From: Vitrella brassicaformis CCMP3155 | Lineage: Eukaryota; Protista; Chromerida | Direction: 5' to 3' | Assembly: GCA_001179505.1 (NCBI GenBank) | Contig: CDMY01001036.1 | Location: 62,001 to 126,000, forward strand | DNA length: 64,000 nucleotides | Shown here: positions 35,100 to 42,859 of the stretch, piece by piece | How the letters are laid out: every line of letters begins with the position of its first letter | How positions within the stretch are numbered: the stretch's first letter is position 1 | Notes under the pieces: model-generated | Databases searched by the model: none | Seen by the model: only the letters and a program-made list of their open reading frames with translations | Told to the model about the DNA's origin: nothing | Translations under genes and position numbers: made by a program

Positions 35100-37456
35100 T
35101 CAGGCGTCCAGTGGTTTTAGAGTGAGGGTACCGCGGTCCCCCGTCCGCGCGTCCCGGGCCCCCCAATCGGTCTTGTCGATGTGAAACTGCCCAGGGATGC
35201 CCTCTATGCTGTTGCCATCGCCATTGGTGCGCTCATCCACCAGCCGCTCGAAGGCATAGGACGGCTTCTGCCGGAAAGTAAGCTGCTTGATGCCTCGGAT
35301 CTTGAGCAGCGACTTGACACACGCAATGCCGAACTCACCAGCGGCATCGCCATCGCCCAACTCCTCAGGCACTGCACACACACGCAAGCAGCAGTCACCG
35401 CAACAATCGACAGGTAGAAAACAGCTGATGAAGGCGATTGGTTGCTGCTCACCTACTACAGTTACATCCACTTCTGCGATGGTCGGCAGCTGATCCGCTA
35501 TGTCGCCCCACGTCAGCCCCCCCTCGCCCACACCGTTCACGCACGACGCCTCGAATTTCTCCAGGTCTCTCTCGCCGCCCACCGCCTGCAGCACCCCCAC
35601 CGCCTCGGCCTCTGTCGGGTGCGTCTGGGAGAGGTCGATGCGTTTGACCGCCGGCATCTTGGTCACCAGCCTTCGGGCAATCGCGAGCCCCATTTCGCTG
35701 TGGCTCAGGAGAAGTGATACAGCGGGGAATGCGTTTTGTGGCATGCTGTCGAGCACAAGTGGGTCCGGCTGCTCGACTTCCGTCATCGTCGGGCTCCCAT
35801 TCGTCCTGGTCCCTCACCGCCACGCTCGTCGCCTTTGAGAAGGTCAGGCGCTGTGCGAGGGCGATGGCAGCGGGGCTGGGTGTGTCGAGAGGGGTGGTGA
35901 GATGCTGGGGACGGACGACGAAGGATGCCTCGGAGGCTTTGACTGCTAGCTGCTGAATGTGTGTCTGCACGAAGTGGGAAGGGGCCGTGGTGCCGCAGAG
36001 CAGCGACAGGTCGAAGTCGAAGTGCTCGTCGGTCTTGATGTCGACGGGGATGTCGGGGCTCACACACACGGCACATGTGAAGGCCTCGATAGCCGACAGG
36101 GCGAGGACAATGCGGCTGTCGATGGGCGCTGCGCCCCTTTCCGTGAGCTCAGCACTGAATTTCTTGATGGATCGACATCCAAGGTCGGCAAGGACGGTCT
36201 GCAGGAAGACACACACAACGTCTGGGCACCCTGCCGCTCTTGCGGGTTTGTGTGACTCGTGACACACCTGAAGGCGCTCGAGTCCCTCCAGCCACTCATC
36301 AATGGTGATTCTGTCCCACCATTCCTCAGCTTCAATGGTGAGTAGGCCGATGTCCTCCAGCTGTGACAGCGGCCCCGACACCTCCGCCAATACACTAGCT
36401 AAGTCTCCAGGCAGCAGGATTACATCCAGCTCCCTCAGACACCGTGACGTCCTCACCCACTGCCTCAGCACCTCTCCATCGTCCTCTCTGCGACTCTCCA
36501 CCGTCCCGTCCATCTGCACTTTCTCGAGGGCCGGGAGGCGCCAGTGCCGCTCGCGACCGAAACACAGAGTCCTGTCTTCCGGCCGTCAAGGCATGGTGAC
36601 GGATATGAGGGTCGTCAGGCCGGTCATGCCGGTGATGGATGTGAGGGATGTGAGGATGGGCGGCGGGTCGAGGGGAGGGGGGCGGACCGCCGCTTTCTCT
36701 TCGGCAGCTGTGATGCTAGGGTACTCCTCGATGTCGACGTCTATGACCGATCCGCCATTGCTGTACTCGATCGACTCCAACGTCTCCCCCGCCGGCTCAG
36801 TTTGCCCCGCTGTGACCGCTGCGGCTCTCCGGCCTTCGCTGTGCCCCTCCACCAATGCCGTAACGATATTGTCGATCACCAACGGCAGAGTGCACTTCCT
36901 GAGACCAGGGTACACTGGGATGCCCTCGACCAGCCTACCACGCCATGTAGGCTTGTCAGCACGTGGGATGCGGAGGCCTCGGGGGTACTTCGCGATAATA
37001 GATCTGAGCTGTGTGAGCTTCCGCCCCCACTCGAAGGCGTCACTGAATGAGAGGCCGCACCAGAAGCGCCGCTCGGCCGCGTCGTGGGTGTCCATGACCA
37101 GCTGGGTGATCTGGCAGCCGACGTGGCGCCACAGCCGCTGGGGCAGCGCCGCCACGAAATGAAGCGATAGAAACGAAAAGACGTAGGCGACGACAACAGG
37201 CTGAATGGACAACACACACCGCACAGAGAGAGAGGAGACAATGAAGATTTGTGTGTTTGCCTGTGATTCGTTTGGTGCATCTTACAATCTGGCCGAAGTG
37301 ATGAGCAAAGGTCTCCAGATCTATGCTGTGCGATGCCGTGGCCTGCTGCTGCTGCTGGCCATCTGCGTCCACCATGGCTTCCTCGTGTGCATGATCGTCT
37401 TCCTCTCCCTCGGCTGCCCGCCTCTGCCGTTTCGCACAGGCAGCTTCTTCACTCAT
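35100..37456 (-). pseudogene. Lineage-specific multicopy family, copy 1, with an in-frame TGA
   Basis: Four-exon structure homologous to 47152-49451. In-frame TGA at 36588-36586 (...SVTMP*RPEDRTLCFGRERHWRLPALEKVQ) with the same frame continuing. Confidence 0.75.
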
Positions 37457-37539
37457 CGTGATGCCTGTTTCTCGTGTACGACGCGCAGATCCATCAGCAG
37501 CCGCCAGTGGGGTAAAGGGTTTGGGCAGGGAATCCGTGA

Positions 37540-37551
37540 CCCTAAACCCTA
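37540..37551 (+). promoter_or_regulatory. Telo-box-like motif CCCTAAACCCTA in the 112-bp divergent intergenic region
   Basis: Exact AAACCCTA core (TTTAGGG telomere-type repeat) between two head-to-head start codons. Function not shown. Confidence 0.3.
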
Positions 37552-37568
37552 ATTCAGGCCCTGGCTCG

Positions 37569-39915
37569 ATGTCTTCGAGCAGCCGGCGTCGGCTGCTTTC
37601 GTATTGCCCTGCCCGTCTGAGGTACTATGGCGGCATCATCTGGGCCACGGTCCTCTCTCTGGGCGTCGGTGCACTCACGGGCTTGCTGCACTCGGGGACG
37701 GCCGAGGCCATGGACGTCCTGGCATGCTCCATCGGCTACTTTTGGGACACCAAGAGATGCCAAGAGGAGCTGGGCATCAAGGAGGGCACGTCACTGCGCG
37801 CCTCGATGCCCTCGTGGGTCCCCGAAGAGATCGTCATGCTGGCGGTGACCGCACTGGGAGGTAAGGGACGCAGGCAGCCGACTTGACTTGATTTGCCACA
37901 CCACAGACATATGGACGTGGATGCACTCGCGTCATCTGTGTGTGTCGTGTGTGTGCCTTGACAGCATTGGTGTCTGTGGGTCTGATCCACACACTGGCTC
38001 CCGAGTGCGGCGGGGATGCCGTCATTGACACCAAGAAGGCCATGGCGAGGGGAGGACCCTACCATCTCAAGGTGGGCATGTATGGCCACACACACACCAA
38101 AGATCGATGGCGCATCTGTCCCATTTGTTCGCTCACGTGTTTGCTGCTGCTGCTGCTTGTGATGCCTGCACGGCAGGCGGCTTTGATGCGGGTCATCACA
38201 ACAGGCTTCTACGTGGGCACAGGTGCACTTCAGTCATGGGTGGCTGAGTGTGTGTCCATCCATCATATCATTGGTCTGTATGGTGTGCTGTGTGGTGTGA
38301 GCAGGCAATCCGCTGGGCATCATCACGCCTCAGATGTACAGTAGTGCCCTCGTCGCTGCCGTGCTCGCTAAATGCTTCAAACACGCCTACCCGCCGTCAT
38401 CGTGGGTACACTCCAACACACAGACAACAAGCACACGGATGGGGCACTTCTCTCAATCTGTCTGTCTGTCTGTTCAGATGATTGTGGGTGCTGCAAGCGG
38501 CATTGCCGCCGCCTTCAACGCTCCCGTGGCTGGTCTGGTGTATGTGCTGGAGGTGCTCATGGACAACTGGCTCAAGGCAAGAGTGGCTGACGTCCTCGCG
38601 GCATCACTCGCCGCGGTCGCCCTGGAGAAGCTCCTGCTGCGCAGAGAGGGGTCAACAGCCACGGGTGGTTCCAACCACCCCTTCTACCCGGAGCTGACAA
38701 ACTTCGAGAACTTCGAATCAGACTACCGCTTGTGGATGCTGCTGTGCATCCCTATCGGCGCCCTGTGCGGCCTCGCGGGCCACGCATTCGTCCGAGTGGT
38801 TCTGTACCTTGACTGGGTGCTCGACGGCAAGGCGCAGGGCGGAGAGACTGTCGAGAGAATTCGCAAGTGGACCCGGAAAGTGCCGCGCTTTCTGCATCCG
38901 GTCCTGGCGACCGTGGTCATCACTCTGATGGGCAGCATCGCATACAGGACCATGGAGACCCGACGCGTCTGGGGGTCGGGCAGGCGCGTTCTCGGGGACG
39001 CCTTCACCAAGGGCCGAGAGAAACCCACGTGGTGGTTTGTGGTGCTGTTTGTGGTCAAGTTTGTGGCCATTGTTGCGGCTAAGGCGTCGGGGGGCCCTGG
39101 CGATCTGGTGGATCCGTCCATCGTGCTGGGCGGGCTGCTGGGTGGCATGGTGGGTGGCCTGGGAGTCTGGTCAGCGCGCGACGGGGCCGGGAAGGCCTTC
39201 TATGGGTGCTTTCTGTTCGGGATGGGTGGCTTCATGACGGCCCTGCTGCGGACGCCCGTCACGGCCATCATCGTCATGTACGACCTCACAGGTGAGCCCC
39301 GGAATGCTCACAAGGGTCTGCTGGCAAGGTGTGGTGTCTGTCGCCTTGTGTCTGGCAGGTGCCTACAGTCTGATCCTGCCGATCATCTTGTGCAACTACA
39401 TCTCCTACTGGGTGGCCCAGCGGCTCTCAGAGGAGTCCTTCCACACCCTCCTGCTGCTGCACGAAGGCATCTCACCCGACGCAATCGACCTCGCCATCCA
39501 GGACAGAGTGCCCTACGCCACCATGGTCGGCGCCCCAGAGCAAAACTCATCTCAATATGCCGCCTCTGCCGGCTCGCCAGCTGGTGGGTCAGCCTCATCG
39601 ACTGCAGCAGCAGAGGCCCACGTGCAGCCGGCCGTGGCCAGCCCCACAAAACGGGCGCCTGGTGGTGCGGGGCAGGGCACGTCGAGCTCCGCCAGAGAGG
39701 CGGGGGATGTGATCATGAAGGAGCTGGTGCGCGTGTACGGCAGGAGGGAGACCAATGGCACCACCGACACCAATGGCACCGCTGGCACCACGAGTGCTGG
39801 TGGTGCTGGTGGTGCTGGTGGGGGGAGGGACGGTGGTGGTCAGCAGGGTGCTGCTGAGAGGGAGCGGGAGAGGGAAGATGATTTGAGTAAGAGGTCATGG
39901 ACCGATAGCCAGTGA
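37569..39915 (+). CDS. CLC (voltage-gated chloride channel) superfamily protein with non-canonical filter and gate motifs, no CBS domains
   Basis: Six exons. CLC scaffold motifs: LAPECGG, GAASGIAAAFNAPVAGLVYVLE, GALCGLAGHAF, FVVKFVA..A..ASGGPG, GMGGFMTALLRTPVTAIIVMYDLTG|AYSLILPIIL. Confidence 0.9.
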
Positions 39916-40540
39916 GGGATGGGCCCACCTCTTCGTGTGTGTGTGGCAAGTCAAAAGGTGTTTCGTCTGTGTGTGCATCAATCAAATGAGCTCGTGCCCT
40001 TTATCCAGTGAGCAGGGAGGAGCCAGGACGGTGCTTGTCTGTCGAGCAAGAGACTCTTACAAGCCGGATGTGTCTGTTTTTCGCGTTGGACCATGACTGG
40101 TGGCCGTCCCTTTTTTGGTTGCTAGGAACTGACTGAGGCGAGAGGGAGGGATTAAGACGTCACGATGTGCTGCACGGCACGGATGGATGTACAGTATGAT
40201 AGCACCGCAATGACCTTTCGATGCTTTCTTCAATGTTCGGTTCGGCTGTCAAGTCTATGTACAAGCCCACCAGGCAGGCAGGCAGGCGGGCAGATACTAA
40301 CCATGCTCTAGTAGTCTGTCTATCCCGCACCAGCCACGCATGAGAATATGCCTCCATCATGGCAGCCCCTCTTCATGGGCCCTCCCTCTGCTCTGTCTGC
40401 AGCCAGCTTATGCTACACATCAACCAACTAATCATTCGCCGATGGACATGGGGCGGGCGACCTGACAGACAAATATGCAGTGCGTGAGAGCCCATTCACT
40501 CAAGACAGACAGATGTCCAAACCGTACCTGTGGTCCTCTG

Positions 40541-42859
40541 TCAGGTGTCTAGTGGTTTGAGAGTGACAGCCTCCTCACCAAGGCCCCCCCAGCTAATATC
40601 GTACCGCCCCTCCAGCCGCTCAATGGTGGTGCCGTGTGTCCGCCCCTCCACCAGCCGCTTGAAGCTATCTCCTCCGGCTTGCCCCGGCGCGAACCGGAAG
40701 GTGAGCTGCTTGATGCCTCGGATCTTGAGCAGCGACTTGACACACGCAATGCCGAACTCACCAGCGGCATCGCCATCGCCCAACTCCTCAGGCACTGCAC
40801 ACACACGCAAGCAGCAGTCACCACAACAGTCAGGAGGTAGAAAGGGCCGATGAAGGCGATTGGTTGCTGCTCACCTTCTACACTGATATCCACTTCTGCG
40901 ATGGTCGGCAGCTGGTCCGCTATGTCCCCCCACGTCAGCCCCCCCTCGCCCACACCCTTCACGAAGCCGGCCTCAAATTTCTCCAGGTCCCTCTCGCCGC
41001 CCACCGCCTGCAGCACCCTCACCGCATCCTCCTCTGTCGGGTGCGTCCGGGAGAGGTCGATGCGTTTGACCGCCGGCATCTTGGTCACCAGCCTTCGGGC
41101 AATCGCGTGCCCATTGCGACTTTTGATATGAAGGCGCGATGCGGCGGGGAATGCGTTGTGGGGCAAGCGCTCGAGCACCACCGGATCGGGCTGCACTTCG
41201 ATCTCCTCGGCGTCCTCCACATCGTTGTTGTGACTGACCACCACATCCTTCGCCTTGGGGAAGGTCAGGCACCCTGCGAGGGCGTTGTCAGCGGGGCTGG
41301 GTGTGTCGAGGTACCCGGGGTTGGTGAGGTCCTCGGGATAGATGAGGAAGTGGGCACTCTCTGATGTGGCGGCTATCTGCGGAATGTGTTTCTGGACGAA
41401 GAGGGACTGGCGCGTGGGCACGTTACACAGGAGGCCGAGGTCGAAGGAGCCGCTGATATTGATGTCGACGGGGATGTCGGGGCTCACACACACGGTGTCT
41501 ATGAAGGCCTCGATAGCCGACAAGGTGGGGAAGATGTCGCTGTCGATGCCATCGGGATGACCCCCCAGGTCGATGATGGCGTTGAACTGCTTGATGGATC
41601 GACATCCCCTCTTAAAAAGGACGGTCTGCAGAAACAACAAACGTAAGAAGCGGTGAATGCTTTGTGCGTGGCGTGTACCTGAAGGGCCTCGAGGCCCTCC
41701 CGCCACTCATCGAAGGTAACATATATAGGCCAATCCATTCCCTCAAAGCTGAGCGTGCCGATGTCCTCCAGCTGTAACAGCGGCCCCGGCTGGCCAGCAG
41801 CTGCCACCGGGATGCGCCTCAGCGAGTCCGCCATGCTGTCGGGATAGGATTTCACCTGCAGCTCCTTGAGGCTTCGCGACGCCCACACCAGGTCCCCCAG
41901 CTCCCCCCCTGCCACCGTCCACTCTGTCTGGACTTTCTCGAGTGACGGCAGCCGCCAGTTACGCCCGCGGCCGGGGATGACTGGCTGTATGGGTCCCGGG
42001 TCCCCCGTGTCCTCCCAGGGGATGCCGGTGATGGATGTCAGGGATGCGAGGGTGGGGGGCGGGTCGAGGGGAGGGGGACGGGATTCCCTCTTCAGGCTGA
42101 TGCGCTGGAGCTCTCGCATCTCGTCGTCATCGATGGCCATGACCGAGTCAAACTCGCTGTACTCGATGGACTCGAGTGTGCTCCCCGCCGGCTGCCCCGC
42201 TGCCGCCGCCGCGGCCCTCTGCCCCTCACAATGCCCCTCTACCACCATCGGCACCAAGGAACCCAGTTTATTCATCAAGCATTCAGGAGGAATAAGAGGG
42301 ATGTCGCTAAAGATGCGGGAGGCCACTGGGATACCGGACGTGCCGGACGGCAGTTGGGATGGCGCGGTGACTGGGGTATCTCGCCATAATGGATCTGAGC
42401 CGTGTGAGCTTCCGCCCCCACTCGAAGGCGTCAGCGAATGACAGGCCGCACCAAAAGCGCCGCTCGGCCGTGTCGTAGGTGTCCATGACCAGCTGGGTGA
42501 TCTGGCAGCCGACGTGGCGCCACAGCCGCTGGGGCAGCGCCGCCACCAAATGAAGCGACACGAACGAGAAGACGTAGGCGACAACAACAGGCTGAGTGGA
42601 CAACACACACCACACAGACAGAGAGGCGACAATGAAGATGTGACACTGTGTGCTTGTCAGTGGTTCGTTTGGTGGATCCACTTACAATCTGGCCGAAGTG
42701 ATGAGCAAAGGCCTCCAAATCTATGCTGTACGATGGCGTGGCCTGCTGGTGCTGCTGGTGTTGCTGGTGTTGGCCATCTGCGTCCACCATGGCTTCCTCG
42801 TTGCCATGCTCCTCTCCCTCGGCCGCCCGCCTCTGCCGCTTTGATGCCGACTCACTCAT
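40541..42859 (-). pseudogene. Lineage-specific multicopy family, copy 2, with a +1 frameshift (or sequencing error)
   Basis: Homologous four-exon structure. An extra C in ggcctcccgcatc (~42317-42319) gives GLPHL* instead of GLRIFSD...; the downstream frame is otherwise open. Confidence 0.7.

What the first reader, a model, noticed from the sequence alone, without database searches (positions are those of the whole stretch)
37569..39915. CLC-fold protein with every anion-selectivity and gating motif replaced, several by acidic residues
Seen: the spliced protein keeps CLC scaffold motifs, but where E. coli ClC-ec1 has APEAGGSGIP it reads APECGGDAVI (Asp at the S107 position, codon 38015-38017). 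LGREGP becomes LGIITP (gating E148 -> Ile, ~38316-38330). PGGIFAP becomes PGDLVDP (two Asp, 39102 and 39111). The central Y445 position reads SFH (~39442), and the E203 position is Val (YVLEVLM). Established: these motifs form the Cl- pathway and H+-coupling machinery in CLC channels and antiporters, and the fluoride-exporting CLC-F variants (GNNLI/GMGLI, GREGT, GEVTP) differ from this set. Inference: three Asp placed into a normally anion-binding pore argue against ordinary Cl- transport. The protein could be a CLC with a new substrate (possibly a cation or neutral solute) or a non-transporting regulatory subunit. The ORF is intact, so it does not look like a decaying pseudogene.
Basis: partly seen in the sequence, partly recalled or inferred. 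Interest (0 to 1): 0.8.

Follow-up and report, generated by a model that had tools for sequence, protein, structure and literature searches.

The report
Chloride-transporter relative with an acidic pore
The alga Vitrella brassicaformis makes and correctly splices a gene for a protein with the full shape of a chloride transporter, but every residue that normally binds or gates chloride is replaced, three of them by acidic aspartates, so it probably no longer moves chloride in the usual way.

Summary
The six-exon gene (37569-39915, + strand) encodes 638 aa, identical to the public Vitrella brassicaformis protein CEM39359.1. Intron-less contigs from three studies show all five GT..AG introns removed as modelled.

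It is a true CLC: Pfam Voltage_CLC 5e-53, and an AlphaFold model that matches CLC-ec1 at TM 0.8.

Against ClC-ec1 the pore residues change as follows:
- S107 to Asp115
- E148 to Ile155
- G355 to Asp391 and A358 to Asp394
- Y445 to His482
- E203 to Val208

Among 269 homologues, Ile at the gate and His at the Tyr site were seen only here.

It keeps 35 of 46 highly conserved scaffold columns. The non-conservative losses cluster in the three pore loops, which argues against plain decay.

No orthologue exists in about 15 billion public proteins. The best hit is a 34%-identical Vitrella paralogue that keeps Ser and the gating Glu and lacks the Asp pair.

The protein belongs to a strongly supported, apparently undescribed alveolate CLC clade (Perkinsus, Amoebophrya, dinoflagellates). 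One conserved subclade there has the same acidic pair (PGDxLEP).

Best reading (about 0.42): a fast-evolving paralogue whose anion sites are filled or neutralised by its own carboxylates, so canonical Cl-/H+ exchange is lost. An altered-substrate transporter remains a serious rival. I rate it a new variant of a known kind.

The parts
37569..37860 (+). Exon 1 (aa 1-97 plus the first base of codon 98). Short cytosolic N-terminus and the first CLC helix.
   Evidence: Identical to P0001. The exon 1/2 joint is seen in RNA-type contigs of X6 and X7.
37965..38071 (+). Exon 2. First filter motif APECGGDAVI, with Asp115 (codon 38015-38017) at the ClC-ec1 Ser107 position and Ala116 at the Gly108 position.
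   Evidence: Alignment A1. Among the homologues Asp occurs here in 3 and Gly108 is 99% conserved.
38177..38222 (+). Exon 3 (46 nt). Helix E, including Arg138 at the ClC-ec1 Lys131 position.
   Evidence: Joints seen in X1, X6 and X7. Arg138 is nearly invariant in the alveolate clade.
38305..38405 (+). Exon 4. Second filter motif LGIITP (38313-38330), with Ile154, Ile155 and Thr156 at the Arg147, Glu148 (gate) and Gly149 positions.
   Evidence: The Glu148 column is 243 E, 7 D and 6 Q, and no homologue has Ile there.
38478..39291 (+). Exon 5, the core of the CLC domain. It holds FNAP...YVLEVLM (Glu207 kept, Val208 at the Glu203 position) and the third filter motif GGPGDLVDP, with Asp391 (39102-39104) and Asp394 (39111-39113).
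   Evidence: Pfam Voltage_CLC 3.7e-39 on this exon alone. HMMER alignment to ClC-ec1. Column counts.
39359..39915 (+). Exon 6. Last CLC helices, with His482 (39442-39444) at the Tyr445 position. It is followed by a roughly 150-aa low-complexity tail without CBS domains and the stop codon at 39913-39915.
   Evidence: Pfam finds nothing in aa 480-638. The model has pLDDT below 50 for 514-566 and 586-615.
39916..40400 (+). 3' UTR, at least 485 nt. Transcript contigs run on past the end of the stretch that was laid.
   Evidence: X7 record 20 and X1 record 5 cover 39356-40400 without a break.
37286..37568 (+). Probable 5' UTR. It is transcribed and contains an in-frame ATG at 37461 (a possible 36-aa extension) and a telomere-type repeat at 37540-37552.
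   Evidence: Contigs of X1, X6 and X7 lie on 37286-37538, but their strand is not known. ORF 37458-37886 is open in the CDS frame. The repeat is unique in the window.

Best explanation
This is a real, expressed, lineage-specific paralogue of the CLC anion channel/transporter family in Vitrella brassicaformis. It keeps the CLC fold but has lost the chemistry of canonical Cl- conduction and Cl-/H+ exchange.

Shown:
- The gene, its splicing and the CLC fold.
- Replacement of Ser-cen, Glu-gate, Glu-in and Tyr-cen.
- Three Asp and one His at or beside the former central and external anion sites.
- Retention of the scaffold residues.

Inferred:
- In CLCs the anion sites are built from free backbone NH groups and the positive ends of helices D, F and N.
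- Here Asp115 sits at the N-cap of helix D, and Asp391/Asp394 sit at the start of helix N.
- Their carboxylates should therefore act as tethered anions that occupy or neutralise these sites, as the gating Glu does transiently in normal CLCs. They may pair with the retained buried Arg138 (the Lys131 position).
- The mobile Glu gate and the inner proton Glu are gone, so no 2Cl-/1H+ cycle is possible.

The protein most likely serves as a non-chloride-conducting CLC-fold subunit with a structural or regulatory role. It could, for example, partner with the canonical-looking Vitrella paralogue CEL97091.1. At most it would be a proton-titratable, normally closed pathway.
For: - Gene and expression.
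- Family and fold: Pfam 180.8 bits against a cut-off of 24.8. AF2 mean pLDDT 80, above 90 in most of the membrane domain. Foldseek finds CLC-ec1 at E 3e-15 with TM by target about 0.8.
- Motif replacement.
- Rarity: no homologue has Ile at the Glu148 position or His among the listed residues at the Tyr445 position, and only 1 has Thr at the Gly149 position. The normally 99%-conserved Gly108 is Ala.
- Scaffold: 35 of 46 columns that are at least 80% conserved are kept. The non-conservative losses are concentrated in the three filter loops.
- Profile score: its Pfam score is no lower than those of most clade relatives tested (157-229 bits).
- Helix starts in the model: helix D begins at 116 and helix N at 393, which places Asp115 and Asp394 at helix N-termini.
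- Accelerated evolution: end branch 1.68 against a median of 0.47.
- Nearest relative: a same-genome paralogue that keeps Ser and the gating Glu and lacks the Asp pair.
- Far below the NCBIfam ClcA and ClcB equivalog cut-offs: 113 against 350 bits.
Against: - CLC-F shows that a carboxylate at or next to the Asp391 position is compatible with anion/H+ antiport (PMC10962343).
- A deeply diverged clade that includes a dinoflagellate protein strictly conserves Asp and Glu at the same two helix-N positions. The acidic pair may therefore belong to a working transport design rather than a plug.
- The framing Gly and Pro of all three filter loops, Glu207 (Glu202, 100% conserved) and Arg138 are retained. 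This would also fit a still-functional pore.
- No partner, localisation or transport data exist.
Confidence: 0.42

Rival explanations
1. Altered-substrate or altered-mechanism transporter. The three carboxylates and the His form a new binding and relay site, so the CLC fold now carries protons, a cation or metal, or a different anion with carboxylate-mediated H+ coupling. On this reading the gate carboxylate has been relocated from helix F (Glu148) to helix D or helix N (Asp115, Asp394).
For: - The filter loops keep their length and their framing Gly and Pro, and Glu207 is kept.
- The count of three filter carboxylates equals that of the conserved PGDxLEP clade (Glu/Asp gate plus Asp plus Glu). 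This looks like a carboxylate moved rather than lost.
- In CLC-F, Glu318 at or next to the Asp391 position contacts the central fluoride, and Thr320 near the Asp394 position lines the external site.
- Placement with the PGDxLEP clade is not rejected (AU p 0.25). It was favoured when the motif columns were included.
Against: - No CLC is known to me to transport cations (my own knowledge). I did not run a paper search aimed at cation transport by CLCs.
- The backbone NH groups and helix dipoles of the CLC filter disfavour cations.
- The unusual Gly108Ala and Gly149Thr changes suggest relaxed filter geometry.
- The motif set is unique to one protein of one species on a long branch.
Confidence: 0.33
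2. Relaxed selection. The gene is a redundant duplicate drifting towards loss. It is still transcribed and open, but it has no selected function.
For: - Long terminal branch.
- No orthologue anywhere.
- Loss of otherwise 92-99% conserved residues.
- A low-complexity C-terminal tail with no regulatory domain.
Against: - A 638-codon frame is intact across six exons, with five consensus GT..AG introns correctly spliced in RNA from three studies.
- 35 of 46 highly conserved scaffold positions are kept, and most remaining changes are conservative.
- The Pfam score is equal to or above those of most clade relatives tested.
- The membrane-domain fold is predicted with high confidence.
Confidence: 0.15
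3. An ordinary chloride channel or Cl-/H+ exchanger despite the substitutions. The public name is 'Chloride channel protein'.
For: Family membership only.
Against: Ser-cen, Glu-gate, Glu-in and Tyr-cen are all absent, and three carboxylates have been added. By established ClC-ec1 mutagenesis (my own knowledge), Glu148 and Glu203 are each required for H+ coupling, and Ser107 and Tyr445 form the central site.
Confidence: 0.05

Closest known systems
ClC-ec1 (E. coli ClcA), the canonical 2Cl-/1H+ exchanger
   Same: Same fold: Foldseek TM by target about 0.8. The Pfam domain is covered end to end. Scaffold motifs such as GxxAAFNAP, GMG, RxPxT and TxxYxLxLP are shared, as is Glu202.
   Different: About 20% identity. 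Ser107 is Asp, Glu148 is Ile, Gly149 is Thr, Glu203 is Val, Gly355 is Asp, Phe357 is Val, Ala358 is Asp and Tyr445 is His. It scores 113 bits against the 350-bit NCBIfam ClcA cut-off. It also has two loop insertions and a 150-aa disordered tail.
CLC-F fluoride/H+ antiporters (CLC-F-eca, PDB 6D0J and 6D0N)
   Same: A CLC with a non-Ser residue at the central-site position and an extra carboxylate (Glu318 in G-E-V-T-P) at or next to the Asp391 position, in contact with the central anion (PMC10962343).
   Different: CLC-F keeps the gating Glu118 and the central Tyr396, has Met or Asn rather than Asp at the Ser position, and has Thr320. The Vitrella protein has none of these. No CLC-F structure appears among its PDB sequence hits.
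Alveolate PGDxLEP CLC clade (one member is from the dinoflagellate Biecheleria cincta; the rest are unnamed transcript contigs). I found no description of it.
   Same: Asp at the Gly355 position and an acidic residue at the Ala358 position. No Ser-cen, no Tyr-cen and no Pfam CBS domain. Three carboxylates in the filter loops. Both lie in the same strongly supported alveolate clade.
   Different: That clade keeps the Glu/Asp gate and has GGGT in motif 1 and Leu at the Tyr site. The Vitrella protein shares only 7 of its 40 signature columns. A sister relationship is neither supported nor rejected.
Vitrella paralogue CEL97091.1 (P0121, 867 aa)
   Same: Best hit in 1.84 billion representatives (E 7e-53, 34% identity). 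Same genome and same clade. Shares LGI in motif 2 and Ile at the end of motif 1.
   Different: It retains Ser (GSGLI), the gating Glu (GIEGP), EE and PGGLFSP. It is longer at the C-terminus and has a shorter branch (0.92 against 1.68).
Arabidopsis AtCLCe, the thylakoid CLC
   Same: A precedent for a eukaryotic CLC that lacks many selectivity-filter residues. It has no Ser (Lys instead), no Tyr (Thr instead) and no proton Glu (PMC4746265).
   Different: AtCLCe keeps the gating glutamate and a CBS domain, and no Asp substitutions are reported.

Membership tests
CLC superfamily (Pfam PF00654 Voltage_CLC) | Profile match above the gathering score across the whole membrane domain | tested here: met
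   180.8 bits against a cut-off of 24.8. Residues 97-474 cover profile positions 1-346 of 346.
CLC superfamily (Pfam PF00654 Voltage_CLC) | CLC fold | tested here: met
   AF2 pTM 0.80, with pLDDT above 90 in most of the membrane domain. All of the 50 best Foldseek hits listed are CLCs, with TM by target 0.62-0.83 (about 0.8 for CLC-ec1).
Canonical Cl-/H+ exchanger (ClcA type) | Central Ser in GSGIP | tested here: not met
   Asp115.
Canonical Cl-/H+ exchanger (ClcA type) | Gating Glu in G(R/K)EGP | tested here: not met
   Ile155. No homologue in the set has Ile at this position.
Canonical Cl-/H+ exchanger (ClcA type) | Internal proton Glu (E203) | tested here: not met
   Val208. Val, Ile or Leu is common here in other CLCs: 76 of the 269 homologues.
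Canonical Cl-/H+ exchanger (ClcA type) | Central Tyr (Y445) | tested here: not met
   His482. The top PDB sequence hit is in fact the Y445H mutant, 2ht2.
Canonical Cl-/H+ exchanger (ClcA type) | NCBIfam ClcA or ClcB equivalog cut-off | tested here: not met
   112.6 against 350 bits for ClcA, and 105.1 against 482 and 72.7 against 425 for the two ClcB-type models.
Eukaryotic CLC channels and exchangers (ClC-0 to ClC-7, plant CLC-a to CLC-d) | Cytosolic tandem CBS domains | tested here: not met
   No Pfam family in residues 480-638. The tail is predicted disordered.
CLC-F fluoride/H+ antiporter | Met or Asn at the Ser position, gating Glu in GREGT, and central Tyr | tested here: not met
   The residues here are Asp115, Ile155 and His482. 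The CLC-F features are taken from PMC10962343. No CLC-F chain appears among the PDB sequence hits at E up to 0.01.
CLC-F fluoride/H+ antiporter | Glu directly after the conserved Gly of the helix-N motif (GEVTP) | tested here: inconclusive
   Asp391 follows Gly390 in the same way. However, the motifs differ in length (5 against 6 residues) and no CLC-F sequence was available to align, so the match rests on the motif only.
Alveolate PGDxLEP CLC clade | Asp at the G355 position and an acidic residue at the A358 position | tested here: met
   Asp391 and Asp394. Twenty-two clade members have Asp and Glu at these positions.
Alveolate PGDxLEP CLC clade | GGGT first motif, retained Glu/Asp gate, and Leu at the Tyr site | tested here: not met
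   The residues here are GGDAVI, Ile155 and His482.
Alveolate PGDxLEP CLC clade | Phylogenetic placement inside or sister to the clade | tested here: inconclusive
   The free tree puts it at the base of the alveolate clade (95/82). Holding it with the PGD clade gives AU p 0.25. Holding it with the P0121 group gives AU p 0.50. It shares 7 of 40 signature columns.

The most novel reading that the evidence does not exclude
Myzozoan alveolates (chromerids, dinoflagellates, syndinians, perkinsids) possess a previously undescribed functional class of CLC-fold proteins with carboxylate-lined filters. The Vitrella protein is its extreme member: the gate carboxylate has moved to the central site, creating an Asp3/His site that binds or conducts protons or cations. 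That would be the first CLC fold with inverted charge selectivity.
Probability: 0.2. Interest if true: 0.85.

Novelty: new variant of a known kind. Interest (0 to 1): 0.55.

Why it matters
CLC proteins are a textbook case of how a fixed fold and four side chains (Ser, two Glu, Tyr) produce anion selectivity and Cl-/H+ coupling. A naturally occurring, expressed CLC that keeps the scaffold but replaces all four, and adds three carboxylates, is a natural experiment on what else the fold can do. The outcomes could be a dead subunit, a proton-gated pore or a new substrate.

The wider result may matter more. The protein sits in a well-supported alveolate CLC clade whose subclades each carry their own non-canonical filter: GGGT/PGDxLEP/Leu, GGGS/GTEGP/Trp, and ankyrin-fused forms. 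My limited paper searches found no description of this clade. Dinoflagellates and their relatives are ecologically dominant, and their ion transport is almost unstudied. These proteins are directly testable by reconstitution.

Tried and rejected
1. Hidden or alternative exons restoring the canonical motifs. None turned up in a six-frame scan of 37000-40500, and no alternative joints appear in the RNA contigs. The one odd joint, 38479 to 40271, has GA..AC ends, only 21 nt on its shorter side, and lies at multi-copy repeats.

2. Orthologue search for a conservation or dN/dS test. The word-index search on exon 5, full HMMER against 1.84 billion representatives and a clade-profile search found nothing above 35% identity except the protein itself. 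The clade-profile search was swamped by bacterial CLCs and did not even return the alignment members. The runs that hold the locus show no sequence differences, so there is no polymorphism test either.

3. Placing the protein in the tree. The quick tree, the careful tree with motif columns masked, two AU tests and signature-column counts leave three positions open: basal, sister to the P0121 group, and sister to the PGD clade. With motif columns unmasked, the constrained PGD tree was 41.7 lnL better than the quick free tree. I treat that as a search failure plus motif bias, not as evidence.

4. Pore geometry and electrostatics. The model coordinates are not exposed to scripts, so side-chain distances, pore radius and potential could not be computed.

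5. Bacterial origin by recent transfer. The top word-search hits are Verrucomicrobia CLC+CBS proteins at about 30% identity, but the tree puts the protein inside a eukaryotic alveolate clade. I rejected this reading.

6. CLC-F membership. Rejected.

7. Literature. Six searches found no paper on Vitrella, chromerid or dinoflagellate CLCs or on these motifs. A review of protozoan channels mentions only Entamoeba and Giardia CLCs. This is a limited search, not proof of absence.

8. ESM Atlas. It gave only a diatom-rich eukaryotic CLC cluster auto-named 'YfeO', with no functional lead.
Full report
**1. What is in the sequence**

The region 37569-39915 (+ strand) holds a six-exon gene with five short GT..AG introns of 104, 105, 82, 72 and 67 nt. 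The spliced CDS is 1917 nt and encodes 638 aa.

The translation is identical to a public protein of Vitrella brassicaformis CCMP3155 (CEM39359.1, UniProt A0A0G4H671, auto-named 'Chloride channel protein'). The window is therefore chromerid nuclear DNA, and the annotated model agrees with mine.

Contigs of three public runs from three studies (X1, X6, X7) lack the introns at the predicted joints. X6 and X7 show all five, and one 2645-nt contig of X7 spans them all and runs on into the 3' UTR. Contigs without introns must derive from RNA, so the gene is transcribed and spliced as modelled.

No alternative joint or hidden exon that could restore canonical motifs was seen.

**2. Check of the observation**

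- Asp115 at 38015-38017
- LGIITP at 38313-38330
- Asp391 at 39102-39104 and Asp394 at 39111-39113
- His482 at 39442-39444
- Val208 in YVLEVLM

The equivalences to ClC-ec1 rest on gap-free local alignment anchored by invariant neighbours (APE..GG, LG...P, G.PG....P, and 26 residues from the conserved Tyr of TxxYxLILP to residue 482). They hold in MAFFT with E. coli ClcA and bacterial relatives and in HMMER alignments to PDB chains. The correspondences are:

| ClC-ec1 | Vitrella protein |
|---|---|
| S107 | D115 |
| G108 | A116 |
| P110 | I118 |
| R147 | I154 |
| E148 | I155 |
| G149 | T156 |
| E203 | V208 |
| G355 | D391 |
| F357 | V393 |
| A358 | D394 |
| Y445 | H482 |

**3. It is a genuine CLC**

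- Pfam Voltage_CLC matches end to end (5.4e-53).
- An AlphaFold2 model built on a 99-sequence alignment has mean pLDDT 80, above 90 through most of the membrane domain.
- Foldseek finds only CLC structures, with CLC-ec1 at TM by target about 0.8.
- The last roughly 150 residues are low-complexity, predicted disordered, and contain no CBS domain.
- It falls far below the NCBIfam equivalog cut-offs for ClcA and ClcB.

**4. How unusual the residues are**

I compared the protein with 269 homologues (120 from the word search, 149 from the exhaustive HMMER search and E. coli ClcA).

| Position | Homologues | This protein |
|---|---|---|
| Gating Glu (E148) | 243 E, 7 D, 6 Q | Ile, seen in no other homologue |
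| G149 | 242 G, 1 T | Thr |
| Tyr-cen (Y445) | 207 Y, then L, W, F | His, not among the listed residues |
| Ser-cen (S107) | 137 S, 58 H, 49 G, 3 D | Asp |
| G355 | 247 G, 22 D | Asp |
| A358 | 22 E, none listed as D | Asp |

Of 46 columns that are at least 80% conserved, the protein keeps 35. Among the 11 losses, five fall in the three filter loops (G108A, E148I, G149T, G355D, F357V). Three are conservative (F199Y, L361I, E414D). The other three are Gly-to-Ala or Gly-to-Thr changes at three further Gly-consensus positions.

Other members of its clade lose 10-15 of the same columns, so its overall divergence is not exceptional for the clade. Its Pfam score (181 bits) lies within the range of the relatives tested (157-229 bits). 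This pattern, scaffold kept and ion chemistry replaced, is not what uniform neutral decay predicts.

**5. Relatives**

The exhaustive HMMER search of 1.84 billion representatives, standing for about 15 billion proteins, found no protein above 35% identity other than itself. The 90%-cluster word search found nothing between 32% and 100%. No orthologue is therefore known.

The best hit (E 7e-53, 34% identity) is a paralogue in the same genome, CEL97091.1 (867 aa). It keeps Ser (GSGLI), the gating Glu (GIEGP), EE and PGGLFSP.

Trees place both proteins in a strongly supported clade (100*; 100/99*) that is separate from bacterial CLC+CBS proteins. The members with a source name are:
- Vitrella
- Amoebophrya sp. 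A120, a syndinian (two proteins)
- Perkinsus chesapeaki
- the dinoflagellate Biecheleria cincta

The remaining members are intron-less ORFs on 2-4 kb contigs from Logan, JGI/IMG and ENA assemblies, which look like transcript contigs. This looks like a myzozoan-alveolate CLC clade.

None of the eight members scanned shows a Pfam CBS domain, and one carries ankyrin repeats. The clade's subclades each have a non-canonical filter:
- (i) The group around the Vitrella paralogue.
- (ii) GGGS / GTEGP / PGGxLVP with Trp at the Tyr site.
- (iii) Twenty-one representatives with GGGT / G(M,G,A)(E,D)GP / PGDxLEP and Leu at the Tyr site.

Subclade (iii) strictly conserves Asp at the G355 position and Glu at the A358 position. 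Those are the same two positions that are Asp391 and Asp394 in the Vitrella protein.

**6. Position in the clade**

With the motif columns masked, a careful IQ-TREE search puts the protein at the base of the clade, as sister to all 45 other members (95/82). Its end branch is the second longest, 1.68 against a median of 0.47.

AU tests reject neither a grouping with subclade (iii) (p 0.25) nor one with the paralogue's group (p 0.50, lnL equal). It shares 7 of 40 signature columns with subclade (iii), 2 of 46 with subclade (ii) and 2 of 7 with the paralogue's group.

Its exact origin is therefore unresolved. The acidic helix-N pair may be inherited or convergent.

**7. Mechanistic reading**

Established CLC structural biology (my own knowledge, in line with PMC10962343 and PMC4746265) says three things. 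The central and external anion sites are made of backbone NH groups and the positive ends of helices D, F and N, plus Ser107 and Tyr445. The Glu148 carboxylate competes with Cl- for these sites. Glu203 feeds protons.

In this protein the mobile Glu and the inner Glu are aliphatic, and Ser and Tyr are Asp and His. In the model, helix D starts at residue 116 and helix N at 393, so Asp115 is an N-cap residue and Asp394 lies in the first turn. Carboxylates there satisfy free NH groups and cancel the helix dipole. Arg138, at the position of the buried Lys131, is retained and could pair with one of them.

I therefore infer that the former anion sites are internally occupied or neutralised, and that canonical Cl- conduction and 2Cl-/1H+ exchange are lost.

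Whether the protein is a non-conducting subunit (my best guess, 0.42) or a transporter with new chemistry (0.33) cannot be settled here. Two facts keep the second reading alive:
- CLC-F, a working F-/H+ antiporter, has Glu318 directly after the conserved helix-N Gly, about 3 A from the central fluoride, and a non-Ser residue at the Ser position.
- Subclade (iii) conserves three filter carboxylates over deep divergence. The Vitrella protein also has three, with one apparently moved from helix F to helix D.

Plain decay (0.15) is disfavoured by the intact frame, correct splicing and retained scaffold. Ordinary Cl- transport (0.05) is disfavoured by the loss of every specific ligand.

**8. Comparison with what is known**

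[quoted passage not shown] It is not a member of the ClcA/ClcB, CBS-bearing eukaryotic CLC or CLC-F groups.

The nearest functional analogies are CLC-F (the extra filter carboxylate) and AtCLCe, a plant thylakoid CLC that lacks Ser, Tyr and the proton Glu but keeps the gate.

Six literature searches found no description of this protein, of chromerid or dinoflagellate CLCs, or of the PGDxLEP motif. This was a limited search.

**9. Verdict**

- It is a new variant of a known kind. Interest is moderate to high for CLC specialists, mainly because it points to a whole uncharacterised alveolate clade with acidic filters.
- The weak points are a single species, no orthologue, no coordinates for electrostatics and no functional data.

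Noticed in passing
window 37540-37552: A telomere-type repeat, CCCTAAACCCTAA, lies 17 nt upstream of the annotated ATG, inside the probably transcribed leader. It is the only copy in the 64-kb window, and none is expected by chance. RNA contigs break around it. It could be a telo-box-like promoter or leader element.
   Followed up: partly
window 37458-37568: The CDS frame is open upstream of the annotated start and has an in-frame ATG at 37461, giving a possible Arg-rich 36-aa N-terminal extension. Contigs from the RNA-type runs cover 37286-37538, but their strand is unknown and several short upstream ORFs precede the start. The true start codon is not settled.
   Followed up: partly
window 35449-36519 (-) and 40549-41706 (-): The two long ORFs flanking the CLC gene on the opposite strand are paralogues: 53% identity over 145 aa, E 9e-36. 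They share a conserved block (CVSPDIPVDI...LDTPSPA) followed by divergent Gly/Arg-rich tails. This fits the dispersed gene family noted earlier on this window (s1-205850).
   Followed up: partly
P0164, P0166, P0217 (transcript contigs) and P0196 (Amoebophrya genome record, contig 16.5 Mb): A sub-group of the alveolate CLC clade has 1100-1290-aa proteins with GxG(V,T,A)D / G(I,M)EA(P,A) filters. P0164, the one member scanned, also carries C-terminal ankyrin repeats. One member is from Amoebophrya sp. A120.
   Followed up: partly
Homologue set, e.g. P0177, P0183, P0188: 58 of the 269 CLC homologues have His at the Ser107 position (motif GHGVP), mostly together with E(I/V) in place of the proton Glu. 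Several carry TrkA_C and CBS domains. This looks like a large bacterial CLC subtype with its own filter variant.
   Followed up: no
window 39790-39829: A GGT/GCT-rich repeat encodes the Gly/Ala-rich part of the disordered tail. The reads tool skipped it as a repeat, and contigs of X6 break there.
   Followed up: no
window 38447-38475 and 40265-40293: Short CTGT- and CAGG-type low-complexity repeats in intron 4 and the 3' UTR attract very high contig depth and many loose ends from unrelated transcripts. They also produce a spurious 38479-to-40271 'joint' with GA..AC ends.
   Followed up: no
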